Source: Heteronotia binoei | Taxonomy: Eukaryota | Direction of reading: 5' to 3' | Length of the DNA: 64,000 nucleotides | Assembly (NCBI RefSeq): GCF_032191835.1 | Contig: NC_083237.1 | Coordinates: 19,902,001 to 19,966,000, forward strand | The notes under the pieces: generated by a model | The model's database searches: none | What the model was told of the DNA's origin: nothing | What the model saw: only the letters and a program-made list of their open reading frames with translations | Shown here: positions 940-61,205 of the stretch, one piece after another | How the letters are laid out: every line of letters starts with the position of its first letter | How positions within the stretch are numbered: position 1 is the first letter of the stretch | Program-made: the position numbers and the translations under genes

Positions 940-1034
940 CTTTCATCAGCCTCTCTGCCAAGGCCAGCATTGCGCTGGAGGAGTCAATGTTCATGTATTC
1001 CGTTAGAGTCTTACCCCAGATGTTATGTGCTGCC
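940..1034 (-). CDS. METTL17: METTL17 exon 7 ([31 protein letters not shown]); later exons lie left of the window
   Basis: Matches human [31 protein letters not shown]; acceptor ttgtag, donor G|GTGAAA; 95 nt. No exon-8 match found in 1-939. Confidence 0.95.
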
Positions 1035-1201
1035 CTACAACGGAGGGAAGAAAGTATGAGTTGGGTTTCTATTAATAGAGCCAAACGTCAGAGCTGCTGG
1101 AGCTCAAAGCCTCCTCAGTTTAGGAGTCCAGCAAGTCCGCCCCGCCTCCCCTCCCTGATCTCTCAGGTAACCATGGAGAAAGAAACAGCACTTGTGCTTA
1201 C

Positions 1202-1275
1202 CAGCTGACAGTGCCAGTCCCGGAGCCAAAATCCAGCAGCGTGGAGGGCTGGAAGTTGGGAACTCGTTTCTCAAT
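1202..1275 (-). CDS. METTL17: METTL17 exon 6 (IEKRVPNFQPSTLLDFGSGTGTVSW), SAM-binding motif I
   Basis: DFGSGTG class I methyltransferase motif; acceptor ctgttag, donor TG|GTAAGC; 74 nt, phase 0 to 2. Confidence 0.96.
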
Positions 1276-2197: not shown

Positions 2198-2471
2198 AAA
2201 GAAGACCGCAGATTTATACCCGCCCTTCTCTTTGAATCAGAGTCTCAGAGCGGCTTACAATCTGCTTTATCTTCTTCCCCCGCAACAAACACCCTGTGAG
2301 GTGGGTGGGGCTGAGAGGGCTCTCCCAGCAGCTGCCCTTTCAAGGACAACTCCTGTGATAGCTATGGCTGACCCAAGGCCATTCCAGCAGCTGCAAGTGG
2401 AGAAGTGGGGAATCAAACCCGGTTCTCCCAGATAAGAGTCCGCACACTTAACCACTACACCAAACTGGCTC
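2198..2471 (-). mobile_element. tRNA-derived Sauria-type SINE
   Basis: Head GAGCCAGTTTGGTGTAGTGGTTAAG with A/B boxes; same family as the copies below. Confidence 0.85.
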
Positions 2472-2533
2472 TCAAAACTCCCAAAAGGCTTCCTAATCCA
2501 TAGACACCTCTAAAAGCTGAAGAGGCAACTCAC

Positions 2534-2615
2534 CTCATGGAAAGCTCGGGACACGGCTGCATACATCCCATCCATCCGGGCTGCCATATACAAAAAGCTG
2601 AGCTCTTCAGTGTAA
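2534..2615 (-). CDS. METTL17: METTL17 exon 5 ([27 protein letters not shown])
   Basis: Matches human [27 protein letters not shown]; acceptor ccctag, donor GAG|GTGAGT; 82 nt, phase 2 to 0. Confidence 0.96.
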
Positions 2616-3344
2616 CTAGGGAGGAGAACAAAAAAGACACAGCCATTCAAGAAGGGGGCGCTTTCCCCTTACACTACCCTAATGTCAGGGACCAGAACAC
2701 ATGCAAAAGAGAGGACCAGCCAAGAAGCTGCCCTTGGAGGCTTGAGTCAGAGGTGCACCAGATGTGCACTCCAGCTGTTACTCTCCAATATTTGGGGGGT
2801 GGGGGTGGGGAGACCTACAATTATATCAGTAGATTATTTGGCAAACTAATTTGACCTTCTAGCCATGTCAGGTTTACATGTTTTCTAGTCTTCATGGTTG
2901 TTTAAAAAAAAAAAAATAACCAGGCAAAAGGGAAACCTCAAAAACCCAGTAATGGCTAAAGCAGCTGCGACTGCACCAATACAGCATCTACGTATGATTA
3001 CTCTAAATTCAATCTTGCACATTTTCTGTTAGAATAAAAACACCCTTTCCTTTATATGCGGGTATGGAGGACCACAATGAAAGGTGGGGACGTCAATACT
3101 TTAATAAATAAATTGAATAGGGTCAGGATATTTTTTGTAAAAAAGAGCTTCTTAAAGGCTACCTTCCACCTAATGTCCTGTAAAATGGTAGCGGGGATCT
3201 ACATGACAGTTTCAGGGCTTGCAGTATCGCAAGCACATTATCGCAACAGACTTGTGAAGCAGGTTAGTGTGATCCCTGTACTGCATAGCTGCGGCAGGGG
3301 GGGAAGAGGGAAAGTGGCTCACCTTGTGCCACATAACCAGTTCA

Positions 3345-3999
3345 GAGGAATCCAATGATTTGACTGTGCAAGCTATGAATTGTTTGTCTATGAAATAGGG
3401 CTCCATTTTACAGCCTGAAAACCTGGGAAGAGTTGAAACACCTCAGAATGGGTGTCTTTTGTGAATGCTGGAATGGGTGTCTTTTGTGAATGCTGAATAG
3501 ATATTATATGCTTCCTCCTCATATTCTTCATCCCATTATTGGAAAAGTGTGGAAGCCATGTTCCCTCTAAGCTGCAGTCTTGTGAGGAAAAAGTCTACTT
3601 GTGAGCTACCGGCATTACAGTTGTGAGCTACTGCATAGTGTGCTCTGGGGTCATCCTTCCTGAGCGAAGACAAAAATGTGTGAGCTGGAGGCTAACAATT
3701 TTTTGAGCTAGTTCACGCTAACTTATCTTAGAGGGAACACTGTGAAAGCACCGTGGATTCATATGAATGAAGTTTAATTTATTGGGGGTGGTTAAAAGGA
3801 AATTATAAGTCAAGGTTATCCACTGGCTGAGGATTGTACTGGTGGGAAATTTGTTTTTGTACCTGAAATTTGTTAATGAACTGTCTATGTATTGTATGAA
3901 CGCTGTACTAATTGATATAAGAATTTGAGAACAGGATTGAATACACGTTTAAACAAATTGGGAAATAATTATTCTACTTAGTGGTCTTTTCACTGCCTA
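3345..3999 (+). mobile_element. TSD-bounded insertion (L1-like 3' fragment with nested MITE) in METTL17 intron 4
   Basis: Exact 16-bp direct repeat CCACATAACCAGTTCA at 3329-3344 and 4000-4015; AT-rich 3' UTR-like content. Confidence 0.55.
3448..3496. repeat. 25-bp tandem duplication
   Basis: AATGGGTGTCTTTTGTGAATGCTG(G) twice. Confidence 0.9.
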
Positions 4000-4165
4000 C
4001 CACATAACCAGTTCATGGCAGAAGTGAGGGCTGAACCTGAGATGCCCCAAGATCCCAGCCATTTTCTTAGCCCCAATGTCACGACAGGAGCACATTCTGT
4101 TTGGACCAAATCTTCTCCAAGAATCAAGCCCAATGGGTTCTGGAAGGGCTGCCAAGGGTACTTAC

Positions 4166-4262
4166 TTCAGTGCCACCCAGTGGTAAGTTGTCTTACGGAC
4201 AGCAGTCAGGACTTCTCTCTCCAATTCTTTCTGTTTGCCTTGATCCAGTTCACTCGGTAGAT
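4166..4262 (-). CDS. METTL17: METTL17 exon 4 (DLPSELDQGKQKELEREVLTAVRKTTYHWVAL)
   Basis: RKTTYHW motif; acceptor ccgttag, donor AA|GTAAGT; 97 nt, phase 1 to 2. Missed by the ORF track. Confidence 0.93.
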
Positions 4263-4850
4263 CTAACGGACACAGAGAGACAAATATAAATGCCACTATA
4301 TTACATCAGTTATATTATAGTTATCCAACTATATTGCATCAGTGTTGGCGTGACAAGCGATTACAACAAGACGTACATGCCCCTCACCTCTGGCACCTCC
4401 CACTAAACTGAACCCACAGCCAAGGATCCACCAACTACAGATGATTTTGGCAACCATGTTATTATTTGGGGTCATCCAGCTTCCACTTCCTCTGGCTGGT
4501 GGGAAAGTGACACTGAGGCGCACGTGAGCTCACAATGTGGACCACACACCAGCACAAGGGAGTGCCTTCCTTTTCCACAGTCCACTCAAAGGGCAGGAAC
4601 CTTCCCTCCCCTTGCCCTGGACTACAAGCTCTACCTCACCATTTCTGAGTCTATTAAACATTACTAAGACTCTCCCAGTCTGATGAAAGCTAAGAGAATA
4701 ACCCTGTCCTTCCAGGATGCTCACTTCTGTTTATTCCACAAATCCAAAAGGCCACAACTTAGCAGACCCTGCTGAGTGATCTGAGGACGTTCCTGTAAAC
4801 TCTTCATTCAAATCACTACCACGCCCCATCAGCTCTAAACCCACGCTCAC

Positions 4851-4997
4851 CTTCTGGAGGGGCTACCTCCCCTCGCAGCTTCTGCTCAAAATATCTGGCC
4901 TTCTTGAGCAACTCAGTTTCCTCAGTGGGACGCTTGCGGCTCCACAGGTAATTGGTGAGGGCCTTGGCCTGTTCCTCCACATTGCGCATGGAGGATC
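4851..4997 (-). CDS. METTL17: METTL17 exon 3 (GSSMRNVEEQAKALTNYLWSRKRPTEETELLKKARYFEQKLRGEVAPPE)
   Basis: Matches human TLTSYLWSRHLPVE; acceptor ttcttgcag, donor G|GTGAGC; 147 nt, phase 1 to 1. Confidence 0.9.
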
Positions 4998-5453
4998 CTG
5001 CAAGAAGAAAAACACGAGGAGAAGGATGCACCATGGCAACCCTCTTCAGTGGTCCAAAGCACTTCCCATTATAAAGTACCATGTCAATGGTCAAGTGAAC
5101 AAGGACAGTTCTCTGCCCCAAGGAGCTAACAATTGTTGCATGGCTTCAGTTAACATAAGAGCCACCCTTTGAATCAGACTAGCAGCCGATCTAGTCCAGC
5201 ATCCTGTCTCTCATAGTGCCCTGCAAGGCTAACGAACAGGGCACAGAATTAAAGACAGTCCATCTGTAACAACAGTTCTGCCCTGCACATTGTTTCTGGG
5301 GAAGACAGAATGTTTCCTGCAGACTTAGAAATAGGGATAACAGCCAGCATCCCAGAGAACTTCAGGGGCAGGTCCAAAGAAAGAAATGACATTCTGTGAC
5401 ACCACATCTGGCCAACAACTCAGACAAGCCCTAAGCAAATCAGGCAACATTCT

Positions 5454-5718
5454 GAGCCAGTTTGGTGTAGTGGTTAAGGTGTGCGGACTCTTATCTGGGA
5501 GAACCGGGTTTGATTCCTCACTCCTCCACCTACAGCTGCTGGAATGGCTTTGGGTTAGCCATAGCTCTCGCAGAGCTGTCCTTGAAAGGGCAGCTTCCGG
5601 GAAAGCTCTCTCAGCCCCATCTACCTCACAGGGTGTTTGTTGTGGGGAGGAAGATAAAGGAGATTGTGAGCTGCTCTGAGACTCTGATTCAGGGCGGAAT
5701 ATAAATCCAATGTCGTCT
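5454..5718 (+). mobile_element. tRNA-derived Sauria-type SINE
   Basis: Full head, body and tail. Confidence 0.85.
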
Positions 5719-5978
5719 TCACAACTTTAATGCCAGTAGCTCACAAAGCAGAATTTTTGCTCAAAAGACTCTACAGCTTAGAGGGAAGCTTCCCAGTACT
5801 TCTGAGCAAAAACCCCCCAAACACATGCCTTGCTCAAAGCCACTCAGAGGCCCAGCTTAAAAGGATACAGACCCTTATTTCTGAATGCCACCAAAACCTT
5901 CAGTTGAGTTCACTTAACAATTCTGCCTCCTAAAAGACTGCAGAAAGGCCCTCATCCCCTGCTCTGGATTTTACTCAC

Positions 5979-6132
5979 CAGCCATCAGAAGCTTAGTGGC
6001 CTCTATTAATTCGGGTGGAAGGCAAACTGGTCTGAGGTGGACAACCCCAGGGTGCTTGCGGTGATGAACATTGCCTAAGAAATCTGAGGAATTATCCACT
6101 TGGGTGACCTTGGGAACGACACCTGCCATGCC
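5979..6132 (-). CDS. METTL17: METTL17 exon 2 (GMAGVVPKVTQVDNSSDFLGNVHHRKHPGVVHLRPVCLPPELIEATKLLMA)
   Basis: Matches recalled human [24 protein letters not shown]; acceptor cctcag, donor G|GTGAGT; 154 nt, phase 0 to 1. Confidence 0.93.
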
Positions 6133-6719
6133 CTGAGGAGGAAAGAGATGTGAAATCAGAGGCACAATGGCGAAGAAGCAAACTGAGGGGGGAAATTATC
6201 CTAAGGCTGGAATTGCTGAACTTGCCCAGCTCTTTATTTCCCACAGTGACCATCCATAAGACTCTAAAGAACTTGAACACCAAACTGCTGTTCTTTAAAT
6301 GGGGGGAAAGTTACATTATAATGCTTATATGTATCTTTTAGAACAGGGGTGGCCAAACTGCAGTTCAGGAGCTACATGAGGCTCTTTCACACATGGGTAT
6401 GGCTCTCGAAGCCCCCACCACCTCATTGGCCAGCTTGGGAAGGCATTTATCTCTAAATCAAACTGGTGGCTTGAAGAATGCATTTGAAGTTGTTTTCTTT
6501 CCAACCTCTCCCTCCCCCCATTTCCTTCCTCCCTCCCTCATCTTGTGGCTCTCAAACACCTGATGTTCATGTCTCGCAGCTCTACGTGGCTCTTATATTT
6601 AGCAAGTTTGGCCACCCCTGTTTTAGAATGTTCTTCCTTTTCTCTTTGTCAACTTTTTTAGGCACAGTAGCAGGTAGATAATCAGGTTGGTTTGTGCTGG
6701 AAGAGTCAGATTTATGCCC

Positions 6720-6840
6720 ACTGGTGCCTTAGAAATCAACAAGATTTGGGAGGATAAGCTCCTGCTATCTGACGAAGGACACTCCGACTCCTGAATGCCT
6801 ATACCCTGGAAATCCTGTTGATCTTTAAGAGGTCAGTGGA
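6720..6840. mobile_element. Second, degraded Penelope-like remnant (inverted arrangement)
   Basis: CTGACGA core at 6769-6775 with GAAA mutated to GAAT; flanking inverted GGTGCCTT..CAACAAGATTT / AAATCCTGTTGATCTTTAAG. Confidence 0.5.
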
Positions 6841-6949
6841 CTTTAACCTTGCTGTTAGGTATACCAAGTGAAGGTATAATGACAGGCAGGGCTTTTTTGT
6901 AGCAGGAACTCATTTGCATATTAGGCCACCCCCACCCCCAAAAAGGGAA

Positions 6950-8400
6950 GTCCAACTTCACCAACCTTTTGGAGTACTTTGAGAAAGCAAATAAGCACAC
7001 AGAAAGCGGTGACTTTATATACCTGGACTTTCGAAAGGTTTTTGACAAGGCACCCCACTAAAAACTCTTTAGTATATTTGGCAGTCATGGAATAAGAATT
7101 AAGGTTCTCTTATGGATTAATAATAATAATAATTTTTAATTTATATCCCGCCCTCCCCGCCGAAGCAGGCTCAGGGCGGCTTACATGGCATAAAATGCAG
7201 ACATTACAATAATACAATAATAAAATACACTAATTACATAACAATTATATTTCACAATTAAAATATACTATTACATTAAAATATACTATTACAGGAAGCA
7301 AAGAATAGGAATAAATGGACAGTTCTCACAATGGAGAGAAGCAAGCAGCAAGGATCAATATTAGGGCCGGCACTATTTAATTTATTCATCAATGAACTGG
7401 AACTACAGGTGACCAAGTTTGCAGATGACACAACATTATTCAGAATGGTGAAAAACCAAGGCTGATTGTGAAGAGCTCCAAGAGGGCCTCCACAAACTGG
7501 ATAAGTGAACGACAATGTGGCACATGAAGTTCAATGCTGGTAAGTATAAGCTGATGCTATGGAGGGGGGAGGAAAATCCCAACTTCAAGTATAGGCTACT
7601 GGGGTTAGAACTTGCATAGACTGAGAAGGAAAAAGATCCTGGGGTCGCAGTGAATAACTCAATGAAAGTGTCAACCCAGTTGTGCTGCAGCAATTCAAAA
7701 GGCACACTCTATGTTAGGGACTATTAGAAAAGGGATTAAAAATAAAACTGCCAATGTTGTAATGTCCCCGTATAAATCTATGGTGCAACCTCATATTGAA
7801 TACTGTGTACAGTTCTGGTCACCATATATCTTAAAGGACATCAGAGCTGGCAAAAGTACAGAGGAAGGCAAAGAAAATTATATCGAAGGTTGGAACACCT
7901 TCCCTATGAGGAAAGGCTGAAAGAGATGACTAAGAATGGGCATGTAGAGATTTATCAAATTATGTAATGGGTGGAGAAGTTGATAAAGAGAACATTTCCT
8001 ACTTCTCCCAAAATACTAGAACTGAAAGCATTCCAATGAAGCTGATTGGCACTAGGTGCAGGATGGACAAAAGGTAATACTACTTTGCCCAGAGACTGAT
8101 TAAAATGTAGAAAACGCTGCCAGAGGATGTAGTACTTGGCCACAGGAAAGGGAATTAGAAAGCTCTCAAAGGGAATTAGACAGATTCATAGAGAATAATG
8201 CTCTCAGTGGCTACTAGCCACAGTGACTGAGAGGGAAACCTCCACATTCAGAGGCACTGATCTTTTGAATCCCAGAGCCAAAAGGCAACGTCAGGGGAAA
8301 GTCTTCCAGAGGAACTGGGTGGCCACTGTGTGAGACAGGATGCTGGACTAAAGGGACCACTGGTCTGAATCCAGCAGGGCTCTTCTTATGTTTTTATGGT
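6950..8400 (+). mobile_element. Degraded 5'-truncated CR1 LINE in METTL17 intron 1
   Basis: YLDFRKVFDKAPH, GSILGPALFNLFINE and KFADDT motifs with stops and frameshifts; CR1-type TTCTTATG tail; AT-rich insert at about 7110-7290. Confidence 0.85.
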
Positions 8401-8915
8401 ATGTAACAAAAGCAAAGCAGACCGAGTATCTTTCCCTGTTGTCTGTAAAACAAGAAGTATCCGCAAAAGTAGTTCTCCCTTTCCACCAACACGGCAAGTT
8501 GCTGGTGCTCCTCCTCTATGCATTTGCTCTATCCGTTTTAATGTAACGGTTGCTTTTTGCAAAATCAGGGTGATTGTAAATAAATCAGGGTGCAAGTATT
8601 TTAAGATAAATTAGCACAAACCTACGGTGACTCAGTGCCTCCTTCTGCATCAGAGTCTCCCCAGACAAGCACTTATCTCCTTATGGATACATATAAAAGC
8701 GTAGCACTAAGCAGTTCTGCATGTAAACTTCTCTGTTCAGCCCCAACCGGCCCTCCATTATCTCGTGTCGGTCTCAGTTAACTACTTTAAGGCACGCACA
8801 GAAGCCGAGTCAGTTAACACGCTTTACTTAACGCGGAATAAGCCTAAAAGAATTAGAATACGCAAATCCACTCCATAATTGACAAGTCAGAGAAAGGCGG
8901 GAAATCCAAGCTTAC

Positions 8916-8981
8916 CCTCAGCGAAACGTCAGGAAGAGGGGCCATTCTCCAAGCTCTCCGCAAATGCCTCACGGCCGCCAT
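8916..8981 (-). CDS. METTL17: METTL17 coding exon 1 (MAAVRHLRRAWRMAPLPDVSLR), mitochondrial targeting-like N-terminus
   Basis: aaaATGGcg start in a CpG-rich promoter; donor AGG|GTAAGC; 66 nt, phase 0, joins exon 2 in frame. Confidence 0.85.
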
Positions 8982-9500
8982 TTTCGAAAGGAACTTTACT
9001 GAGCCTGCGCAGGAAAGAGGACCCACGTGAGCTTCCGCTCAGAGCCTCGCGCCCGCCATCTTGAGGAGGAATTTCATTCCGACTACCCAAGGCGGAGACT
9101 CTCGCTTGCCTTCAGAGTGGGCCAATCGCCGTGGCAATGTCCTCATCGCGCACCAATCGTAAGCAGATATGCAAAATAAGGCAGTGAAAGTGGGAGGAGG
9201 AGAACCGAACGACATCATTTCATCAGACTGCAAAGGCGATAGAGGTTAATAGAGGGGAAAAGAGAGCGAGAGAGCAGTTAGTGAGTGGCGAGCGCTGATT
9301 GGTTTTCAAGCTTGTCCTATTAACAGACACAGATGGAGGTTTATTTGAATATTGCTTACTGATTGGATCGTTTTTACCGTTTAGAGCGGTGCCCCCCCCC
9401 GATGTCCTGCTTATAAGCATGTTTCCTCGCTAAATGGGAGGGGCAAAAGAAAGCTCCGCCCACTCGAGTTGTTGAAAATCATCGCTCCGCTTTGTACTCC
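8930..9500 (-). promoter_or_regulatory. METTL17 CpG promoter with two YY1-type motifs, E-box, ETS core and several CCAAT boxes
   Basis: CpG-rich; CGCCATTTT (8977-8985) and CGCCATCTT (9054-9062), CACGTG (about 9024), CGGAAG (9032-9037, minus strand), CCAAT/ATTGG near 9123, 9154, 9298 and 9362. Confidence 0.75.
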
Positions 9501-9522
9501 CTCCCTTCTCTAACAAATTTTT

Positions 9523-9525
<3 letters not shown>

Positions 9526-9590
<65 letters not shown>
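9526..9590. repeat. (TA)n microsatellite upstream of the METTL17 promoter
   Basis: About 32 perfect TA units. Confidence 0.98.
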
Positions 9591-9593
<3 letters not shown>

Positions 9594-10286
9594 GGGGGCT
9601 CTCTGACGCATCAATGGGGTGATTCCCCCTTCCCCCACATTTAGCTTGCTAAAGTAGTGAAGAATTTGAAAGTGCACAATTATGTCTTAGTGAGGTTGGC
9701 TATAGTTTTTGTGTCTTGTTATAGAGCAGGGGTGGCCAAACTTGCTTCACGGAAGAGCCACATAGAATACACATCAGATGTTTGAGAGCCGCAAGGCATG
9801 ATGTTTGAGAGGCAAGGGAAAGAAGGAAAATAGGTGGGGAGGGAGGGAGAGGTGGAAAGAAAGTAACTTTAATGCATTCTGAATGCTGCCAGCTGGCTTG
9901 GATTGGAGAAGTGATTTAAAGAAATAAATGCCTTCTCCAGGCTGCATGAAGGGGCAGTGGGGGTTTCAAGAGCCACACCATATGCCCCCCCCCCCCGGTT
10001 ATAGAGTAACAAATTAGTCAACAGCTAGGCTTGCCAGCCTCTAGGTGGTAGCTGGAGATCTGGAGTTAATTTAAAACCAATTCTCCCTCTAAAGCTCTGG
10101 GAAAGAATTGCCGTCATTTTGACCCAGGCTTATTAGCAATAGGATAATTAACAGACATTCTCACATTCAGATCAAAGGTTTTCTGAATTTGTTAATTTTA
10201 CTATTCTGCTATTGTGTTTTTTTTTTACTTTGTACCACTTTGCATTTTACACCCCACCTTCTATATGTAGCTCTGCTCACTGTACC

Positions 10287-10385
10287 TTATTCCTCGTCTG
10301 AAGAAGTGTGCATGCACACGAAAGCTTACATTCTGAATTAAAGTTCGTTGGTTTTAAAGGTGCTTCTTGACTCCTGCTTTGTTCC
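10287..10385 (+). mobile_element. Penelope-like pLTR remnant carrying a minimal hammerhead ribozyme motif
   Basis: CTGAAGA, stem GTGTGC-AT-GCACAC, GAAA, palindromic AGCT, then GTTGGTTTTAAAGGTGC tail. Confidence 0.7.
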
Positions 10386-10539
10386 CTCTAAACTGTGAGC
10401 AAAAATTCTACCTCAGGAGCTACCAGCAGGCCTGTAGCCAGAAAATGTTGGGTGCAGGGGTCTGGGAGCTGAAAAAATTGGGGTGGGGGGTGAGGCTTGG
10501 CTGCTTCTTCCCTCCAGCGGCCAGCCTCCCTGGCCCCAG

Positions 10540-10780
10540 CTCTCTCTTGCACTATCTCTCTGGCTGTTGCTCTCTCACTCTCCCACTCTGTCTCTCTGCC
10601 GCTCTCTCACTGTCCCCCTCTCTTGTGCTGCTGTTCTTTCTCTCGCTCTACCACTGTCTCACTGTCTCCCTCTCTCTCTCTCACGCTGCCGTTCTCTCTC
10701 TTTATCTGCCAATCTCCCCCTCACTGCCCCTTCTCTCTGCCGCTCTCCCTCTATCTCCTGCTGTCTCCCTCGCTGGTCCT
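10540..10780. repeat. Degenerate CT-rich tandem repeat
   Basis: Repeated GCTCTCTCACTGTCCCCCTCTC-like units. Confidence 0.7.
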
Positions 10781-11627
10781 GGAGGCCCTCCAACGGGGGG
10801 ACCCTGCATAGGGAAGAGGTTTTTTAATAGAGCGCCTGCCCCCCAATAGCTACGGGCCTGGCTACCGGTATTAAAGTTGTGAGCAAGTGATTTGGCTACT
10901 GCATAAATTAGTTTGCTCTGGGGCCACCCTTCCCGAGCTGAGACAAAAATGTATGAGCTGGAAGCTAAAAACCCCCTGTAACTTAGTTCACACGAATACA
11001 GCTTAGAGCAGAGGTGTCGAACACATTTGTTACGAGAGCCGTATATGAAATAAATTATTAGTCCTTGTGTGGACGGCCAGGTGTGTCATAAATGTAATGC
11101 CAGGTAGTGGATATGTAAACTTTACAAAGGACACAAACACAATTTATTTTAAAAACAAACAAACAAACTTAAAACATGCTTAAAAGATTACCATTCTTGC
11201 AATATTTTGTTTATTCAACAATATCTGTTAACTCTTGTTCTGAATTATTACATCAAAATCTGGAGATAATGTCTGTGCTGCAGCAATTATGAGTAGACTG
11301 TTCAGGTGTTGTTCAGATGTGTATCTGTAAGTTGCAAATCTACTTTTGATTTATTGACATCCATTACAGAAATCTCATGGTCAATGCTTTGAGCCTAAAA
11401 CCCAGGGGAAAGCATGAAATGGTTGGGCATTGCAAGCTTTTGCACATAAGTTGCTTTGTGTGCTGGTCAGCCAATGGAGAAAATAGATAGTAAAGATATC
11501 ACACCCAAACACTCTTGGTTCAATCATACATACAATTACATTATGATCTTTTTTTTTTTACAGTGGATTACCAATAGGCACACTGATAACATAGGAAAGG
11601 AGAAAGAGAAAGAAATAGAAGCATGGA

Positions 11628-11850
11628 GCTGGTGTGTGGTGTACTGGTCAGAGTGTCAGACTAGGAACTGAGAAGACTCAGGTTCAAATCTCCACTTTGC
11701 CATGAAGCTCCATAGGTGACATTGGTCACTGTCTTTCAGCCACGCCTACCTCACAGGGTTGTTGTGAGGATAAAATTAAGAAGGAATAGCCATGAACACC
11801 TCTCTGAGCTCCTTGGAGGATGTGCAGGAGGATAAAAATATATATGAGAT
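11628..11850 (+). mobile_element. Old CORE/MIR-like tRNA SINE
   Basis: Degenerate A/B boxes plus CCTACCTCACAGGGTTGTTGTGAGGATAAAAT core-like segment. Confidence 0.6.
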
Positions 11851-12444
11851 AAACAGCAAGTTGGGGCGAGAGTGTGTGCGCATTGCTCAGCACATGAGTC
11901 TTTAAAAAATCAAAAGTGGCAAATTCAAAATGCATCAGATCGATAATCTTGAACACCAAAATTCAGAGGAAAATCCAAACGTGGATTTGGAAAGCCCTGA
12001 CTAATTTGAGGAACAATGAATTAGGAATATGGTTGCCAACTCTGGGTTGGGACATTCCTGGAGTTTCGGAGGCACAGCCTTGGGAAGGTGGGGGTTGGGA
12101 AGGGGAGGGGCCTCAGTGAGGTCAAATGCCATAGAATCCATTCTCCAAAGCAGCCATTCCCCCCCACCCCCCCGGAGAACTAATCTCTGTTGTCTGGAGA
12201 TGTAACTCTGGGAGATCTCCAGACCCCACCCAGAGGTTGGCAACCCAGGAGTTGAAGGGTTTAGCCCAGATATATTGGGGGAAGGGTCTAGGGTGAAGCC
12301 GTACCAACAAATTGGGATCCCAGAGAGCGCTGCCTCCAACATTCATGCGATGTAACAGAGAAACCCTCTTCTGAGTAGCCTGTCTGCCCAAAGATACCTT
12401 TATTTCAAGGGGACGGGCACGTCCATTCTGAGGCCACGCAGTGT

Positions 12445-12891
12445 TCATCCACTCATAGTAAGGACTTCATCTAGGTGCACGGGCAAGCTGTTTTCATCGC
12501 AGTGAACGATCAGGCGCCTGGTGCTGAGGGTGGCGTAGTAGATGCACTCCCGAGCCCGGGTCACCAACCCCAGCCTGCAGATGGTGATGGGGTAGTATAT
12601 TTTGCTCTGACGCTTCCCGGTGCCTTTGTAGGGATTCCCGCCAGCCCCACACACGTCCTGGAGGTGTGCCTCAGAGGCGTGGATGAAAACGTTGAATGGC
12701 TTGCATGACTGGAAGAGGCTCCTGTAATTCATCTGAACTTCGCAGTATTCGGCGTTCTCGATGTTCGTTTTGGGATTGTCGTGGTGCTGCCTCAGGAACA
12801 TCTGGTACTTCTCGTTGTAGTGGGCAGTGGCGCCCACCAGCAGGTAGGTGGCGGCCGCAAGGTAAAGGGGCATCCTCTTCCAAGTCCACAT
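12445..12891 (-). CDS. RNase A superfamily protein 'RNase-a' (148 aa, secreted), catalytic triad intact
   Basis: Signal peptide; FLRQH (His12), CKPFNVF (Lys41), PVHLD (His119/Asp121); 6 Cys. accATG just after acceptor ctgcag| at 12898; the ORF track's GTG start is the exon boundary. AATAAA at 12399-12404. Confidence 0.95.
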   Translation of the reverse strand: MWTWKRMPLYLAAATYLLVGATAHYNEKYQMFLRQHHDNPKTNIENAEYCEVQMNYRSLFQSCKPFNVFIHASEAHLQDVCGAGGNPYKGTGKRQSKIYYPITICRLGLVTRARECIYYATLSTRRLIVHCDENSLPVHLDEVLTMSG

Positions 12892-17080: not shown

Positions 17081-17224
17081 NNNNNNNNNNNNNNNNNNNN
17101 NNNNNNNNNNNNNNNNNNNNNNNNNNNNNNNNNNNNNNNNNNNNNNNNNNNNNNNNNNNNNNNNNNNNNNNNNNNNNNNNNNNNNNNNNNNNNNNNNNNN
17201 NNNNNNNNNNNNNNNNNNNNNNNN
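17081..17224. other. Assembly gap
   Basis: 144 N. Confidence 1.
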
Positions 17225-21150: not shown

Positions 21151-23039
21151 CCCAGCACAGTTGCTGTGGGAGCATATGGAGGCAGAGGCTTCCAAAAAGA
21201 GCATTGCATGATGCCACACTGTCATTTCAGGCTAGGAACCTGGGAGTGACATTGGCACAACATAGGGTTGCCAGATCCAATTCAAGAAATATCTGGGGAC
21301 TTTGGGGGTGGAGCCAGGAGACATTGGGGTGCAGCCAGGAGCAAGGTTGTGACAAGCATAATTGAACTCCAAAGCGAGGTCTGGCCATCATATTTAAAGG
21401 GACCGCACAACTTTTAAATGCCTACCCTTCAATGGAAATAATGAAGAATAGAGGCACCTTCTTTTGGGGCGTATAGAATTGGCTCTCTGGTCCAATCCTT
21501 TTGAAACTTTGAGTGTGTTTTGGAGAGAGGCACCAGATGCTATGCTGAAAATTTGGTGCCTCTACCACAAAAGACAAAACAGCCTCTCCAAGCCCCAGAT
21601 ACCTACAGATCAATTCTCCATTATACCATATGGGAATCGGTCTCCATAGGGAATAATGGAGTACCCAGCAGACATTTCTCTCCCCCCCCCAACACACACA
21701 CTTTCCGATGACCCTGAGGTGAGGAGATGGCCTACAAACCAGGGGATCCCCTGCCCCCACCTGAAAACTGGCAACCCTTGCACAACATGACAACACTCTA
21801 GGATGTCTCTCAATCTCATTGGTAAAAAAATAGATATGGTAACTCTCTCAAAACCATAGATAGAGATCAAGAAAATTCCTAGAAGGTTAGTGCATTGTAC
21901 CAATGTCATGTTGGGGTTCCAGCCCAAAGCAGTGTCGGCAGCATCGTGCAATACTGTCCCCCCCCACCCCCCCTTTTCCACATACACCCTGCCAGCCCAC
22001 TGAGTGCCAGTGGGGATGGGGAATACCAGTGGGATTTTGCCCGCTATAATTAGGCAAATAGCAACTCTGAGGCTGCGATCACGCACATTAAATAATGCGC
22101 TTTCAATTCACAATGCACTTTCCAACTAGGGTTGCCAAGTCCAATTAAAGAAATATCTGGGGACTTTGAGGGTGGAGCAAGGAGACTTTGGGGGTGGAGC
22201 AAGGAGACATTGGGGGCGGAGCCAGGAACAAGGGTGTGACAAGCATAATTGAACTCCAAGGGAGTTCTGGCCATCACATTTAAAGGGACAGCACACCTTT
22301 TTAAATGTCTTCCTTCCATAGGAAATAATGAAGGATAGGGGCACCTTCTTTTGGGGCTCATAGAATTGAACCCCCTGGTCCAATTGTTTTGAAACTTGGG
22401 GGGTACTTTGGGGAGAGGTACTAGATACTATACTGAAAATGTGATGCCTCTACTTCCAAAAACAGCTCCCCCAGAGCCCCCGAAACCTCCAGATCAATTC
22501 CCCATCATACCCTATGAGAATTGATCTCCACATAGGGAATAATGAAGTGCTCAGCAGATGTTTCCCTCCCTCCTCCCCCCACTGTTTCTGGCGACTCTGA
22601 AGCAAGGGATTGGCCTCTCTACTCCCGAGTGGCTGCCAACTTATTCCAGGTAACACAGACACACCATCCCAAGAGGAAACCTTTCAATCGGAGACTGAGG
22701 TGGAAAAGCGCATGGTCCTCTGGGGGCGGGGCTTCCCCCCGCCAGCCAGCTGACTGGGGCAGGAAGGCGCCTGGGAAACCGGGAAAAACCCTGCTGGGAT
22801 CTGGGGAATAGGCAAGCCTATTTCCAACTGGATTTTACTGTGTAACTGGCAAAATCCAGTTGTAAAGTACACTGAAAGTGGATTGAAAGTGCATTATTTA
22901 GTGTGGGTGATCGCAGCCTGAGTGAAATACAGAGACTAATAGGGGAGAGGATTGTCATACATCAACTCTGAGGAGTTTTTGCCTTCAGAGACTTGTGCTA
23001 TCAATTATTTCCTATAGTGGTTACAGTCTGGGATCCTTG

Positions 23040-23483
23040 CTACATGAAATTGGTCTCTTCAAAAAGGTCAGGCCACCCCTTTTTGTCACAGGTAATCATG
23101 ATGAATCTCCTTCCCCTGTGGAAATCGTAGAAGCACCGGTTAGGTGCCGTGCTCTGCAGAAAGCAAGTGGTGACGGGAACCTCTACCTTGCTGATTCGCA
23201 AGTTCCGGCGGTAGTAGGTCCCCCCTCTCCAGTTGCAGATGTTATTCATGTCATCCCTGGAGATGTGGACGAAGCTGTTGGTCTGCTTGCAAGGAGTTGT
23301 CATCAATCTCTGTCTCATCATCGTGTTGCAGTACTCTGGTCCCGCATTGGTCTGGGGGAAGTCGATGTGTTCCCTCACGAACTTCCAATAGTGAGGAGTC
23401 TGGGAGGAGACGGAGGTCACAGCCAGAAAGGAAACCAGTAAGACCAGGACCAGCGCTTTGCTCCCTTTCAGCATGAGTGTCAT
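23040..23483 (-). CDS. RNase A superfamily protein 'RNase-b' (147 aa), lacks catalytic His119, predicted pseudoenzyme
   Basis: Signal peptide, mature N-terminal Gln, FVREH, CKQTNSF, 6 Cys; C-terminal PDLFEE replaces PVHF(D/E). Acceptor ttgcag| at 23502. No stop or frameshift. Confidence 0.93.
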   Translation of the reverse strand: MTLMLKGSKALVLVLLVSFLAVTSVSSQTPHYWKFVREHIDFPQTNAGPEYCNTMMRQRLMTTPCKQTNSFVHISRDDMNNICNWRGGTYYRRNLRISKVEVPVTTCFLQSTAPNRCFYDFHRGRRFIMITCDKKGWPDLFEETNFM

Positions 23484-26083
23484 CGCTGAATTCAGAGGAA
23501 TCTGCAACAGTAGCAAGGAGTAAAAGGGTTAAAGCAGGCTGATACTGCTTCTCAGGGCTTTTTTTGTAGCAGGAACACCTGTGTATATAAGGCCACACAC
23601 CCCTGAGGCAGAGCCGGATTAACAATTAGGCCATATAGGCACTGGTCTAAGATCTCATGCCTTTAGGGGCCCCGGACCGGCTCCCCCCTAGTTTCCCCCC
23701 GTTTTGCAGCCCTCCCAGCCTGCATGTGCTGCTCTTTACCCAACTTGTCTGGGGCAGCTGCTGCTGGCATTGTTGTCAAGTTTGCCTCTCCCCCGCAGCT
23801 TAGTAAAAGGGACTTTCGAGAAGGTGCCTGCAGGCTGCAGCGGGGGTCATGGGTAATGGAGTGGGCACTCAGACTCTGAGATAATTTGCAAGGCCCCCCC
23901 GCAAGATTTTGACTACCTAGGGACCTCCACGGGGTTTGATCTGGCACTGTCCTGATGTAGCCAATCCTCCAAGAGCTTACAGGGCTCTTCTTACAGGGCC
24001 TACTGTAAGCTCCAGGAGGATTGGCTACATCAGGGGTGTGTGACTTAAGATGCAAAGGAGATCCTGCTACAAAAAAAGCCCTGATGCTTTTCCGCCCCCC
24101 CCCCGCCATCCCTGCAAGCTGAACACAGCCGTTCATCTCAAGTCCTCAGTTTTATTGATTCATTGATTATCTTCCTTTCTCACTGGGGCTGGGAAAGTGA
24201 AAAATGACATAGGATTGGGCCAGGGCTTTTTCCTGTGGAACTGTGCTGGGACAAAGTTCCATAGAGGGCTGACCCATGGGTTTGTGGCACCCTAGGAAGG
24301 CACCCCCCTGCTGCCTCCCCGCCAGTGCCGCCCAAAGGTGCCCCCCTGTGTTGCCTTGCACCCCTAATGTGGTGCTGCAACCCCCCTTCCGTGGCAAGGC
24401 AGTGGTGGCACCCCCTTCCCTTCCCATCCCTCCCCTCCGCCCGCGTTCACAGTCCAACGGGTGAAACTTATCTTTAGAACGACTGGGCTGAAATGAAGGC
24501 TTGGCTCCCCCCTCCTTTCTGGAACCGGAAGGGAGGGGGGAGCCAAGCCTTCATTTCAGCCAGGTCGTTCTAAAGATAAGTTTCACTGGCGTTGGGCTGT
24601 GAGTGCGGGGGCGGAGAGGGTTAGGGCTAGGAAAGGGAAAAGGGGAGGAACGGGAAGGGGTTGCCGCCGCTGCCTCGCCACCCGCTGTGATTGTGGCAGT
24701 GGGGCAGAGAAGGGAAGGGAAAGGGGGAGGGAAGGGGATGCCGCTGCTGCCTCGCTGCTCACTGTGATCGCGGTGGCGGATCAGGGAAGGGGATGCAGTC
24801 TCTGCCTCGCCGCCGGCTGTGATCGCAGCAGGAAAGAGAAGGGAAAGGAAGGGCGGCGGGGGGAGGTGAAGGGAAGGGGCAGGCGAGGCAGCAGCGGTGG
24901 CAGGCGGCGGTAGTGGGCGGCAGAGGCAGGCAAACTAGGTGCTTGCCTGGGGCACCGGGAGGGGGTGGGGAGCCCAATTTGGCACCCCCACCCTCCCAGA
25001 GCCCTAGGCAACCGCCTAGTTTGCTAGTGGGCAAGCCGGCCCTGGTTCCAAAACCTCTTTGTGGAAACAAAATTCTCAAAATATGTCTAAAGGTTCATAT
25101 GGGGCACTGGGGGAGCATGACACCACTTGTGATGTTACAAAAATATTAAAATAAAAATAATTTTTAAAAAAGATTTACATGAGGAGATGCTCAGTACCAG
25201 TTGTGGGCGAGGAGGGAAACAGCCAGACTGCGCAGGGGACTGAAGTTTAGAAGCCGCTTTAAAGCAGAGGCATGCCCATAGCTCATGAAAATAACATCGT
25301 TTCAAAGAATCCCATGTGTTTCTCCTTCATTTCCCTCTTGTGAGTTCCAGCACCTCTTTTTCCAGAAAAAAAGCCCTGGTTTTGAATTGCAGAACCAACC
25401 AGAAGTCTAGAAAACAGAAATGAAGCAAAGCCCCCCAGAGGGTGTGGCCTAATATGCAAATGAATTCCTGCTACAAAAATAAAAGCCCTGGTTACCTCAG
25501 CTGTTCCGGTATCACTGGGTTGTACCCTGCCACCTCAGTCAACTAAACACTGAGCCTTTTCTTCATTCCATGGAGCCATCTGTTAACCTGCTAAACCTGT
25601 TATTTCCAGGCGTTGGGCTGTGAGTGCGGGGGCGGAGAGGGTTAGGGTTAGGAAAGGAAAAAGGGGAGGAACGGGAAGGGGTCTTTTGAATCTTACTCTG
25701 GGAGTGATAGGCCATATTACAGACAGCTGTTACAGACAGCTGCCCATCTCAAGCTGCTTTCAGAAAAAGAAAGAACTTGGGGCACCATGTTCATAAATTT
25801 TGTGGGATTTATTAATCGATAACCTCTAATGAGGATTTTCTCTTTTAATCACATCCAGAATTTCCAGACCATACCCCAGCACAGAAAAATACATTGATAG
25901 CACGTAGCTTAGCCTTATCTAAAATATCTTTATATTGAAGCATTAATTTGGCTTAAAACAGCAGAAAGCATAAGCAGCGTGGAGTGTGAAAAGCAACATA
26001 AGAACACAGCAAGCGGGATATGAAAGGGTAGTGGAGCACATTCAAAGTTGGCCCAAAGGTGGCTTGCCAGGAAAAGGCCTTAC

Positions 26084-26194
26084 CTAAACCTCCACAAGGT
26101 TTTCCTTCAGATGAAGATCTGAAAGAAGGAAGGAGGGAGAACGGTTTTGGATCCTCTTGACCTGACTCCCATGAGATATTCCCCTATTTTTATA
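26084..26194 (-). promoter_or_regulatory. Predicted TATA box and non-coding exon 1 of RNase-b
   Basis: TATAAAAA at 26194-26187 (minus strand) and donor TAG|GTAAGG at 26083. Confidence 0.6.
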
Positions 26195-26939
26195 TATTCT
26201 ATTCAGGTTGTCTATCCACACTTCTAATCCAATCAGAGTCTTCCAACTACTCTTGGATTTCTACCAACGTGGTGACATCTCATTATTGGCAAAAAAAAAT
26301 AATTGTCATATGGTCATGGAAAACATGTGTCCTGTCTGGGTTTCCCCTTGCCAAGGACACCCCAACTCTATTGGGTCAAGTTGCCCTCTGCTGGAACCTG
26401 TGCTGGAACACTTCTGCCCTGTGCTAGAACACTTCTGCTTTGTCCCAGCATTGTAAACATGGCCTGTCTCCTGACATCATTTCATAGAAAAAGAGACACT
26501 GGAGCTCATCAGCACAACTCACTTGCATAGATCACACGCCTCTGACATCACTGGCGGGTGTACTAAATGATATCAGCTCAGCATCGACTTTAAAATGCTT
26601 CTTGAATTATAATTGTCATCATAAAACCTTACTCCCGTCATACTTTTTAAATTACTTTCTCTCCTATGTGGCCACAGTGGCAGGATGAGGATTTCCATCT
26701 GTCCGCTTTATACGGCTTCGTTATTTTCCCAGTTTTTGTGTGGGAATATATTAGAAAGTTTGTCACATCTTAAGAGTCCAGCGAAATTCTCACAAGGGGT
26801 TTGAGCGATGGAGCCGAGAAGCAAGTATTTGCACAATAAAATTTAGCGGTTCCAGAGCTCTGCTCCTGTGAGCTGCTGCCCAAAATGAGACTGGAGATGG
26901 CAAAGCCTGGGACATGAGAGACTTCAGCATAGTCTAGTG

Positions 26940-30373: not shown

Positions 30374-30648
30374 NNNNNNNNNNNNNNNNNNNNNNNNNNN
30401 NNNNNNNNNNNNNNNNNNNNNNNNNNNNNNNNNNNNNNNNNNNNNNNNNNNNNNNNNNNNNNNNNNNNNNNNNNNNNNNNNNNNNNNNNNNNNNNNNNNN
30501 NNNNNNNNNNNNNNNNNNNNNNNNNNNNNNNNNNNNNNNNNNNNNNNNNNNNNNNNNNNNNNNNNNNNNNNNNNNNNNNNNNNNNNNNNNNNNNNNNNNN
30601 NNNNNNNNNNNNNNNNNNNNNNNNNNNNNNNNNNNNNNNNNNNNNNNN
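30374..30648. other. Assembly gap
   Basis: 275 N. Confidence 1.
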
Positions 30649-34854: not shown

Positions 34855-35295
34855 CTAAAGGGCAGCTTTGAAGTGAACAGGCACACCGTTGAGACAGGCC
34901 ACTCGGATGCGCTGGGAGCTGAGTCTGGCTCTGTAGCTGCAGGGAGGCCTCTGGGAACCCCCAGAGATCCGGCAGGAGGTGATGTCAAAGCTGACATTGC
35001 TGTCGTAATAATTCTCACTGGAGTGGGTGCCTCCGTGGGTGCAGATGGCGTCCACATCCTCGGGGGGCCCGTGGACAAAGGTATTGGAGGGCTTGCAGGC
35101 GTCTTTGGTCATCTTTCTGCTCTGCATTATGTGGTTGCAATAGCGCCGGCCGTCCAACTCAGGGCTGGTCTTTGGGAAGTCGACATGCTGCCGTTGGAAC
35201 TTCTCGTAACGGGTTTCCCTCTGGGTGGAGGCTGGCAAGGGTCCCAGCAAGACCAACAGGAGAAGCAGCACTGGCCAGACTGACATTGGAGCCAT
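34855..35295 (-). CDS. RNase A superfamily protein 'RNase-c' (146 aa), angiogenin/RNase4-like, triad intact
   Basis: Signal peptide; RYEKFQRQHVD, CKPSNTF, RPPCSYRA, PVHF; 6 Cys; acceptor ttcccctag| at 35305; accATGG. Confidence 0.96.
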   Translation of the reverse strand: MAPMSVWPVLLLLLVLLGPLPASTQRETRYEKFQRQHVDFPKTSPELDGRRYCNHIMQSRKMTKDACKPSNTFVHGPPEDVDAICTHGGTHSSENYYDSNVSFDITSCRISGGSQRPPCSYRARLSSQRIRVACLNGVPVHFKAAL

Positions 35296-50157: not shown

Positions 50158-50652
50158 ATGAGAGCTTTTCAGAGACATGCTCTGATTCTCCTGGCTTTCC
50201 AAGTGATGGCATCTGCACTGGAAGACTCTCCCGAGAAAACAAATGGATTTCTACTCTTCTTGAGGCAACACTTTATTCCTGACTATGTTCCCCTGGAAGA
50301 TGTGGACTGTAACCACCTAATGAGTGGTAGTATCCTTACCACCGGGAAATGCAAGAAAGCAAATACCTACATTGTGTCCTTCCCGGATCTTCTCCAGGCT
50401 GTTTGCAATTCCAAAGGAAAGCCCTACAACAACCTCCGGAAAAGCCTGGACCGCTTCGACCTCATTACCTGCACATTGGAAGAAGACATAGCCGAAGAGC
50501 TCTGTAACTACAAGCTGCGTCGCTTCTCTGACTCCATCGTTGTCGGCTGTGATAGATACGGGTATCCTGTTCATCTTGAAGAAAGTTATTTTCAAACAGC
50601 GATGGAAAAGGAGGCCAAAGCCAGCAGGACTTGGTACAACTATTTTTTGTAG
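50158..50652 (+). CDS. RNase A superfamily protein 'RNase-d' (164 aa), acidic, C-terminally extended, opposite orientation
   Basis: Acceptor ttttaacag| at 50135; MRAFQ... signal peptide; FLRQH, CKKANTY, PVHLEE; 6 Cys; AATAAA at 50760-50765. The ORF track's upstream 41 aa are intronic. Confidence 0.93.
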   Translation: MRAFQRHALILLAFQVMASALEDSPEKTNGFLLFLRQHFIPDYVPLEDVDCNHLMSGSILTTGKCKKANTYIVSFPDLLQAVCNSKGKPYNNLRKSLDRFDLITCTLEEDIAEELCNYKLRRFSDSIVVGCDRYGYPVHLEESYFQTAMEKEAKASRTWYNYFL

Positions 50653-60776: not shown

Positions 60777-61205
60777 CTAAATAATTCTGTGGAAGTGTAC
60801 TGGCTGCGACGCATTATTGCAGAGCACTTCGATACGTCTGTAGTCGGTCCAGCCCCTGTAGTTACAGGGGGGCCTCATGCGACGTCCCCCAGTGGCTTCA
60901 CAGTTAGTGAGATTAAAGGAGGCATGGCTATCAGTGTAGTTGCCAACACGGGTCCCTGCGGTGGTGCAGATGGCATCTACGTCGTTTGCAGGGTTATGGA
61001 TGAAAGAGTTGAGATATTTGCAGATGCGGCGGGTCATCCCTCTCCTCTGCATCATGAGGTTGCAATAGAGCCGGTCAGTCAGCTGGGGACTGGTCTTTGG
61101 GTAGTCCATATGTTTCCTCTGGAAGTCCTGGTAGGTAGGTTGTGGGGAGGCTGGCAAGGGCCCCAGCAGGATCAACAGGAGGAGCAGCATTGGACAGGCT
61201 GACAT
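60777..61205 (-). CDS. RNase A superfamily protein 'RNase-e' (142 aa), cationic, closest paralogue of RNase-c
   Basis: Acceptor cccccag| at 61224; signal peptide near-identical to RNase-c (LLLLL.LLGPLPAS); FQRKH, CKYLNSF, PVHF; 6 mature Cys. Confidence 0.96.
   Translation of the reverse strand: MSACPMLLLLLILLGPLPASPQPTYQDFQRKHMDYPKTSPQLTDRLYCNLMMQRRGMTRRICKYLNSFIHNPANDVDAICTTAGTRVGNYTDSHASFNLTNCEATGGRRMRPPCNYRGWTDYRRIEVLCNNASQPVHFHRII

What the first reader, a model, noticed from the sequence alone, without database searches (positions are those of the whole stretch)
23040..23483. RNase-b: intact, cationic RNase lacking catalytic His119 (candidate pseudoenzyme)
Seen: the C-terminal motif reads cct gac ctt ttt = P-D-L-F, with the His codon replaced by CTT (Leu) at 23064-23066 and Val118 replaced by Asp; Gln11 is Glu. 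The signal peptide, His12, Lys41, all 6 Cys, the splice acceptor and a TATA/exon-1 unit are kept, and there are no stops. My count for the mature chain is 17 K/R versus 11 D/E. Established: His119 is the general acid, and cationic RNases such as ECP and chicken RNase A-2 kill bacteria independently of catalysis. Inference: a non-catalytic antimicrobial or RNA-binding protein kept by selection.
Basis: partly seen in the sequence, partly recalled or inferred. Interest (0 to 1): 0.78.

Follow-up and report, generated by a model that had tools for sequence, protein, structure and literature searches.

The report
Gecko RNase lacking its catalytic histidine
An intact, apparently transcribed gecko gene for a secreted angiogenin-like ribonuclease has lost one of its two catalytic histidines, a change found in none of seven related lizards and snakes, so it is either a newly non-enzymatic protein or a gene that has only just begun to decay.

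Summary
On the minus strand, 23043-23483 is an open 147-codon RNase A-family gene (Pfam E 5e-24). It has a signal peptide, His12, Lys41 and six Cys. The conserved Pro-Val-His-Phe strand reads Pro-Asp-Leu-Phe (GAC CTT at 23064-23069).

It is one of five RNase paralogues in the window and the only one without this His. Seven positional orthologues (three geckos, one unnamed species, three snakes) all keep the His; six read Val-His and Euleptes reads Ile-His. The loss is therefore private to this lineage.

The gene looks otherwise normal:
- Terminal-branch dN/dS is 0.41, against a background of 0.33.
- Only 3 of 45 otherwise invariant residues are changed.
- The fold is predicted with confidence as angiogenin-like.
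- The splice acceptor is conserved.
- Four RNA runs from two studies hold an exon-sized share of the locus.

These data bound any neutral drift to about a quarter of the terminal branch. They cannot separate "kept by selection after the loss" from "inactivated recently".

The antimicrobial idea gains nothing. At +6 this is the least cationic of the eight orthologues. Glu11 is shared with orthologues that keep the His.

The scan's notes show no earlier report of this.

Verdict: real, modestly interesting, and a new member of a known kind (RNases 9-13).

The parts
23043..23483 (-). RNase-b coding sequence, 147 codons (stop TAG at 23040-23042)
   Evidence: ORF list and translation. Pfam PF00074 E 5.1e-24.
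23403..23483 (-). Signal peptide, 27 residues: a basic N-region, a 13-residue hydrophobic core, then small residues before Gln28
   Evidence: Read directly from the sequence. Aligned with the signal peptides of seven orthologues. No signal-peptide predictor was run.
23043..23402 (-). Mature chain, 120 residues, N-terminal Gln, six Cys, net charge +6
   Evidence: AlphaFold2 model has mean pLDDT 92.4. Foldseek TM-scores are 0.87-0.92 to turtle egg-white RNase and human angiogenin.
23064..23069 (-). Codons GAC CTT (Asp-Leu) where six orthologue DNAs read GTC CAT or GTC CAC (Val-His). This is the lost general-acid His (RNase A His119, angiogenin His114).
   Evidence: Codon alignment and protein alignments. 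Two single-base changes, T to A and A to T, lie three bases apart.
23367..23369 (-). His12 codon, retained; preceded by Glu at the Gln11 position
   Evidence: This His is invariant in all 14 aligned family members.
23286..23288 (-). Lys41 codon within the signature C-K-x-x-N-S-F, retained
23484..23521 (-). Pyrimidine tract and CAG splice acceptor (AG at 23502-23503), followed by 18 nt of 5' UTR in the coding exon (23484-23501)
   Evidence: Conserved in seven species. Its position fits the six-residue extension before the Met in the annotated Paroedura and Pseudonaja products.
22939..23039 (-). Start of the 3' UTR, conserved among geckos for about 100 nt. No canonical AATAAA or ATTAAA lies within 740 nt.
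12448..12873 (-). Paralogue RNase-a (context). Keeps P-V-H-L.
34858..35295 (-). Paralogue RNase-c (context). Keeps P-V-H-F.
50158..50652 (+). Paralogue RNase-d (context). Keeps P-V-H-L and has a long C-terminal tail.
60780..61205 (-). Paralogue RNase-e (context). Keeps P-V-H-F.

Best explanation
RNase-b is this gecko's single-copy orthologue of a conserved squamate angiogenin-like secretory RNase.

Shown:
- It is an intact gene with a signal peptide and a confidently predicted angiogenin fold with six Cys.
- Two neighbouring codons of the conserved Pro-Val-His catalytic strand changed in this lineage only (Val to Asp, His to Leu).

Inferred from mutagenesis of angiogenin:
- The protein is still secreted and folded, but it cleaves RNA orders of magnitude more slowly, if at all.

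Inferred, weakest step:
- It is still kept for a role that does not need the general acid, such as binding a partner, RNA or a surface.
- The grounds are that everything else in the gene remains under the same constraint as in its orthologues, and that decayed copies are not seen in these clusters.
For: Family and fold:
- Family membership.

Orthology:
- Collinear flanks with Gekko and with the unnamed L002 species.
- The same gene order d-c-b-a in Paroedura.

The loss is private:
- All seven orthologues keep the His.

Effect of the substitution:
- ANG H114A and H114N are 10,000- and 3,300-fold down, and H114R keeps 1.6-2 % activity with the fold intact. Pro112, Val113 and His114 are described as part of the catalytic apparatus (PMC3493651; PMC5296752).

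Constraint:
- Terminal-branch omega is 0.41 (95 % profile interval 0.20-0.92). It does not differ from the background of 0.33 (p about 0.55). Omega = 1 is disfavoured at p 0.03-0.10 depending on topology.
- 3 of 45 otherwise invariant residues are changed, the same count as in Gekko.
- The 14 C-terminal codons are identical to Gekko at every base except the two changes.
- Pairwise omega of 0.34-0.40 is similar to that of the canonical paralogue c at 0.37.

Other support:
- If the time of loss is uniform along the branch and drift follows it, an open 441-nt frame is expected only about 7-24 % of the time. This is my own integration of the rates.
- Four RNA runs in two studies hold 0.26-0.47 of the sampled words of 22700-24000, about the size of the coding exon.
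- A second intact gecko RNase, the Paroedura orthologue of RNase-a, also has His to Leu, with pairwise omega 0.24.
- No decayed RNase copies turned up in the window or in the Gekko and L002 loci searched with RNase-b. All four RNase genes called in the Paroedura locus are intact.
Against: - No other species shares the change, so selection after the loss is not measured.
- The omega interval nearly reaches 1, and it averages over a long branch (dS 0.27) on which the loss could be very late.
- Val to Asp beside the lost His looks like damage rather than remodelling.
- Another invariant residue, a Lys aligned with angiogenin Lys54, is also lost.
- The charge is lower than in every orthologue.
- In this birth-and-death family, lineage-specific gene death is common (PMC3845642).
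- The codon was not checked in reads, and fixation in the species is unknown.
Confidence: 0.45

Rival explanations
1. Young null allele or incipient pseudogene. The gene became dispensable in this lineage, or the variant is still segregating. A recent double hit destroyed catalysis, and the frame is open only because too little time has passed.
For: - The change is private to this genome among eight species.
- Both changes hit the Pro-Val-His catalytic strand, and one puts a charge next to the active site (PMC3493651).
- An open frame and two or fewer further hits at invariant sites are fully expected if drift has lasted less than about d = 0.05-0.1.
- A point estimate of omega slightly above background (0.41 against 0.33) allows roughly 13 % of the branch to be neutral.
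- RNase A genes die often in other lineages (PMC3845642).
Against: - It requires the loss to fall in the last quarter or so of the branch.
- The locus appears in RNA runs of two studies.
- No decayed RNase copies are seen in the clusters examined, while a second 'dead but intact' copy exists in Paroedura under omega 0.24.
Confidence: 0.35
2. Still a working ribonuclease. Another group, such as water, the new Asp or a nearby His, takes over as general acid, or the enzyme acts on substrates with good leaving groups. Activity would then be lowered rather than lost.
For: - His12, Lys41, the C-K-x-x-N-S-F motif and Phe120 are all kept. That would be needless if catalysis were gone for long.
- H114R angiogenin keeps about 2 % activity (PMC5296752), and angiogenins are weak enzymes anyway.
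Against: - H114A and H114N in angiogenin lose 3,300- to 10,000-fold (PMC3493651).
- This His is kept in all seven orthologues and in all four window paralogues.
- Leu has no proton to give.
- No structural evidence puts Asp118 in reach. The coordinates of the model could not be inspected here.
Confidence: 0.08
3. Artefact: an assembly or consensus error, or a somatic or rare variant of the sequenced animal.
For:
- The exact protein is on record from one contig only.
- A search for partial products found nothing.
Against: - Two substitutions three bases apart inside otherwise perfectly conserved sequence are not a typical consensus error.
- There is no gap nearby; the N runs are at 17081-17224 and 30374-30648.
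- No donor for a mis-join or gene conversion exists. The 14-mer around the site occurs once in the window.
Confidence: 0.07

Closest known systems
Angiogenin (RNase 5) and mouse angiogenin-2, -3 and -4
   Same: - They are the best sequence matches among solved structures (E 9e-22 to 1e-20).
- TM-scores are about 0.9.
- They share six Cys, an N-terminal Gln and a C-terminal G-W-P-V-H-F-(D/E)-E-S stretch, which the orthologues of RNase-b also carry.
   Different: - RNase-b has Asp-Leu where angiogenins have Val113-His114.
- Orthology to mammalian ANG was not tested; only family and fold likeness were.
- No function of the squamate group is known.
Human angiogenin disease variant H114R and laboratory variants H114A and H114N
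   Same: The same residue is replaced. The fold is kept and activity falls to 1.6-2 %, or by 3,300- to 10,000-fold (PMC5296752, PMC3493651).
   Different: Those are rare pathogenic or engineered alleles of a working gene. Here the change sits in a reference genome of a species and comes with Val to Asp next door.
Non-canonical mammalian RNases 9-13
   Same: [quoted passage not shown]
   Different: - They are old and shared by many mammals.
- They are much more diverged, and they are not orthologous to this gene.
- RNase-b lost one triad residue recently and keeps the signature motif.
Green turtle egg-white ribonuclease (PDB 2zpo)
   Same: It is the top structural match, at 40 % identity and TM 0.87, and it is a reptile member of the same family.
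   Different: By its entry title it is a ribonuclease. It is not the positional orthologue.
Eosinophil cationic protein and chicken leukocyte RNase A-2
   Same: They are family members whose killing of bacteria does not need catalysis.
   Different: They are far more basic (pI near 11, from memory) than RNase-b at pI 9.2 and net +6. They also keep their catalytic residues. No bactericidal feature was tested or seen here.

Membership tests
RNase A superfamily (Pfam PF00074) | Profile match above the curated threshold | tested here: met
   E 5.1e-24, 85.4 bits against a cut-off of 23.1, covering profile positions 3-118 of 121.
RNase A superfamily (Pfam PF00074) | Secretion signal and six to eight conserved Cys | tested here: met
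   A 27-residue hydrophobic leader aligned with those of the orthologues. Six Cys lie in invariant columns. The signal peptide was judged by eye, not by a predictor.
RNase A superfamily (Pfam PF00074) | Signature motif C-K-x-x-N-T-F | tested here: met
   It reads C-K-Q-T-N-S-F. The Ser-for-Thr variant is shared by the whole orthologous group.
RNase A superfamily (Pfam PF00074) | RNase A / angiogenin fold | tested here: met
   AlphaFold2 pLDDT 92.4 and pTM 0.84. Foldseek E about 1e-13 and TM 0.87-0.92. This is a prediction, not a solved structure.
Canonical (catalytically competent) RNase A-family enzyme | Complete catalytic triad His12, Lys41, His119 | tested here: not met
   His12 and Lys41 are present. 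His119 is Leu (CTT at 23064-23066).
Pseudoenzyme kept by selection | Catalytic residue lost in an otherwise intact gene | tested here: met
Pseudoenzyme kept by selection | Expressed | tested here: inconclusive
   Four RNA runs in two studies hold 0.26-0.47 of the sampled words. Reads, splice joints and strand could not be examined.
Pseudoenzyme kept by selection | Purifying selection after the loss of the residue | tested here: inconclusive
   Whole-branch omega is 0.41 (interval 0.20-0.92). There is no second lineage with the change.
Pseudoenzyme kept by selection | Loss of activity shown, and the allele fixed in the species | not testable with these tools
   This needs recombinant protein and population or read data.
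Catalysis-independent antimicrobial RNase (ECP or RNase A-2 type) | Exceptional cationicity or a bactericidal region | tested here: not met
   Net +6 and pI 9.19, the lowest of eight orthologues, which range from +7 to +10.

The most novel reading that the evidence does not exclude
Gecko RNase clusters repeatedly turn canonical secretory RNases into non-catalytic proteins by the same His119-to-Leu step. It is seen in RNase-b here and in the RNase-a orthologue of Paroedura picta. RNase-b would then be a pseudoenzyme caught shortly after its birth, kept for a binding role such as a host-defence ligand, a decoy for ribonuclease inhibitor, or an RNA trap.
Probability: 0.2. Interest if true: 0.5.

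Novelty: new member of a known kind. Interest (0 to 1): 0.3.

Why it matters
The RNase A family is a textbook case of birth-and-death evolution and of proteins whose biological roles may or may not need catalysis. The known non-catalytic members (RNases 9-13) are old and much diverged, so the first steps of such a transition are not visible in them.

This gene differs from working orthologues at essentially one site. That gives a clean natural pair for comparison, this protein against the Gekko or Paroedura orthologue. The pair could show what an angiogenin-like protein still does without its general acid.

If it is instead a gene caught at the moment of death, it is an ordinary event of little wider interest.

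Tried and rejected
1. Raw reads. The codon, heterozygosity, splice joints and expression level therefore remain unchecked. Local sandbox scripts did read the whole window, among them one BLAST with it as subject and an ORF scan; no result there was used. Searches left those places out.

2. Partial products in other runs. A word search with residues 75-147 found no candidate.

3. Gene conversion or mis-join as the source of GAC CTT. The 14-mer around the site is unique in the window.

4. Micro-inversion. The four changed letters are a plain reversal, not a reverse complement, so this is not an inversion (read).

5. Exon 1 and promoter. Paroedura exon 1 has no match upstream in the window. A 660-nt block conserved with Gekko lies at 25736-26398, but nothing shows it is an exon. 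The TATATA at 23584-23589 is not conserved.

6. A poly(A) signal. No AATAAA or ATTAAA lies within 740 nt after the stop, and the spot where Paroedura has AATAAA is diverged here.

7. METTL17 as a flanking marker. It was not found in window 1-12400.

8. The big representative search was not run.

9. My first run of the codon model failed numerically on two trees. It was repaired by clipping the transition probabilities.

Full report
**What is there.** The minus strand of window 23040-23483 carries an uninterrupted 147-codon reading frame. It matches Pfam RnaseA at E 5.1e-24, 85.4 bits against a threshold of 23.1. The product has a 27-residue hydrophobic leader and a 120-residue mature chain that starts with Gln.

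**Context in the window.** A tblastn search with the protein finds five RNase A-family loci and nothing else above noise. They are a (12448-12873, minus), b (the finding), c (34858-35295, minus), d (50158-50652, plus) and e (60780-61205, minus). All five are open. The other four read P-V-H-L or P-V-H-F, so b is the only copy without the second catalytic His.

**Orthologues.** Two word-based protein searches returned seven relatives of 48-66 % identity:
- Gekko japonicus, named 'angiogenin-4-like'
- Paroedura picta
- Euleptes europaea
- a Logan contig of unnamed origin (L002)
- Python bivittatus
- Pseudonaja textilis
- Ahaetulla prasina

Orthology is positional. The Gekko and L002 loci are collinear with the window on both sides of the gene. 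The Paroedura locus has the same gene order d-c-b-a, followed by a METTL17-like (Rsm22) gene, and the Python gene also sits next to that gene.

All seven end in W-P-(V/I)-H-F-E-E-(S/T)-N-(F/S)-M. In the six with DNA the two codons are GTC CAT or GTC CAC, against GAC CTT here. The change is thus two transversions three bases apart, T to A and A to T. The surrounding 14 codons are otherwise identical, base for base, to Gekko. The loss is private to this lineage among the eight species.

Glu at position 11 occurs in four of the eight, three of them with the His, so it is not part of the lesion.

I did not verify that. The gene tree does place the sequence among gekkonid geckos.

**Fold.** An AlphaFold2 model of the mature chain, built on a 14-sequence alignment, has mean pLDDT 92.4 and pTM 0.84. 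Foldseek puts it on green turtle egg-white RNase (40 % identity, TM 0.87) and on human angiogenin (TM about 0.92). By sequence, the nearest solved proteins are mouse angiogenin-2, -3 and -4 and other angiogenins, at E 9e-22 to 1e-18. The model cannot judge the effect of two point changes.

[quoted passage not shown] They report that H114A and H114N lower activity 10,000- and 3,300-fold, and that H114R keeps 1.6 % (PMC3493651). Bradshaw et al. solved H114R, found the fold unchanged, and measured about 2 % activity (PMC5296752). By inference, RNase-b is a folded protein with little or no ribonucleolytic activity. This was not measured.

**Is it kept by selection?** I fitted a Goldman-Yang codon model with my own code to seven orthologues on three topologies.
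- One-ratio omega is 0.34.
- With the window's branch as foreground, omega is 0.41-0.45 against 0.33 in the background.
- The foreground is not different from the background (p 0.52-0.57). It differs from 1 at p 0.03 on two trees and 0.10 on the third.
- The 95 % profile interval is 0.20-0.92.
- On this branch dN is 0.112 and dS is 0.270.

The branch changes 3 of the 45 columns that are invariant in the other seven species: a conservative Leu to Val, a Lys to Asn, and the His. Gekko also changes 3 of 45. Roughly 20 changes would be expected if the whole branch were neutral. Pairwise omega against Paroedura and Gekko is 0.34-0.40, much like the canonical paralogue c at 0.37.

So most of the branch was constrained. 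But the loss may have come late.
- 3.5 % of random substitutions in this frame create a stop.
- Depending on the indel rate assumed, the frame would probably stay open for a neutral distance up to about 0.05 to 0.2.
- Two or fewer further hits at invariant sites bound a neutral period to about 0.07. This is my own Poisson bound on the counts.
- That is about a quarter of the branch.

If the time of loss is uniform along the branch, an open frame under pure drift is expected about 7-24 % of the time. This favours retention by a factor of roughly 4-14. Against it stands a prior that lineage-specific gene death is common in this family (PMC3845642). I therefore put retention at about 0.45 and a young null at about 0.35.

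**Expression and gene structure.** Four runs recorded as RNA, from two studies, hold 0.26-0.47 of the sampled words of 22700-24000. That is about what the coding exon alone would give. All are labelled metatranscriptomic. Other runs of one of the two studies are labelled feces metagenome, which hints at gut expression but no more.

The pyrimidine tract and CAG acceptor 18 nt before the ATG are conserved in all seven species. The annotated Paroedura and Pseudonaja products carry exactly six residues between their upstream exon and the Met, which fits that junction. Exon 1, the promoter and the poly(A) site could not be placed.

**The antimicrobial reading.** At net +6 and pI 9.19 the protein is the least basic of the eight orthologues, which range from +7 to +10. 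The two changes together remove a partly positive His and add an Asp. Nothing in the sequence points to a gain of a membrane-active surface.

**A parallel case.** The Paroedura orthologue of RNase-a (L003:17606-18052) is an open 148-codon gene that reads P-V-L-L where the window's RNase-a reads P-V-H-L (CAC to CTC). Pairwise omega between the two is 0.24. There are thus two intact gecko RNases with the same His-to-Leu step. No decayed copies turned up in the window or in the Gekko and L002 loci searched with RNase-b, and the four RNase genes called in the Paroedura locus are all intact. This leans weakly towards tolerance of a non-catalytic state.

**Comparison with what is known.** Secreted RNase A-family proteins without a full triad are known: mammalian RNases 9-13 (PMC3845642). 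Those are old and strongly diverged. RNase-b meets every family criterion tested except the triad, so it is a family member but not a canonical enzyme. It is best filed as a new, young member of the known kind 'non-catalytic RNase A homologue', with the reservation that it may simply be dying.

**Limits.**
- No read-level check was possible.
- The codon model is my own implementation, with seven taxa and one foreground branch, so its power is low.
- The position of the unnamed L002 species in the tree is uncertain.
- The closest relatives of this gecko, which would date the loss, are not in any collection I could reach.

Noticed in passing
L003:17606-18052 (Paroedura picta), orthologue of window RNase-a at 12448-12873: This is an intact 148-codon RNase that reads P-V-L-L where the window's RNase-a reads P-V-H-L (CAC to CTC). 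It also has His in place of Asn44. It is a second, independent His119-to-Leu in a different paralogue and species. Pairwise omega against the window copy is 0.24.
   Followed up: partly
L001:10001-10441 (Gekko japonicus orthologue of RNase-b): In the branch model the Gekko terminal branch has omega about 1.0 (p 0.01-0.015 against one ratio), although it keeps the whole triad. Pairwise omega against the window is only 0.34, so the signal depends on the model.
   Followed up: partly
L002:276-731 (Logan contig of SRR13336340, species unknown): This orthologue sits on a long branch. It has a five-residue insertion after the conserved T-Y-Y stretch, 8 changes at otherwise invariant sites and omega 0.65, yet it keeps Val-His.
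   Followed up: no
window 50158-50652 (+) and L003:2390-2896 (-): RNase-d's long acidic, aromatic C-terminal tail beyond the RNase domain is also present in the Paroedura d-like gene. The tail is therefore conserved between two geckos.
   Followed up: no
window 23584-23589 (-): A TATATA lies about 80 nt upstream of the splice acceptor, inside what the orthologous gene models treat as intron. It is not conserved with Gekko. It could drive an unspliced transcript, but this was not tested.
   Followed up: no
window 25736-26398: A 660-nt block 76 % identical to Gekko lies 2.3-2.9 kb upstream of the RNase-b start (in Gekko, about 5 kb upstream). It is a candidate promoter or first exon, or else a shared repeat.
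   Followed up: no
window 22995-23441 (+): A 148-codon open frame runs antisense to the RNase-b coding sequence. I take it for a by-product of the sense frame; it was not examined.
   Followed up: no
window 17081-17224 and 30374-30648: Two runs of N flank the RNase-b region at a distance. They were left as they are.
   Followed up: no
No letters of them were sent to any search tool, and nothing is claimed about them.
   Followed up: no
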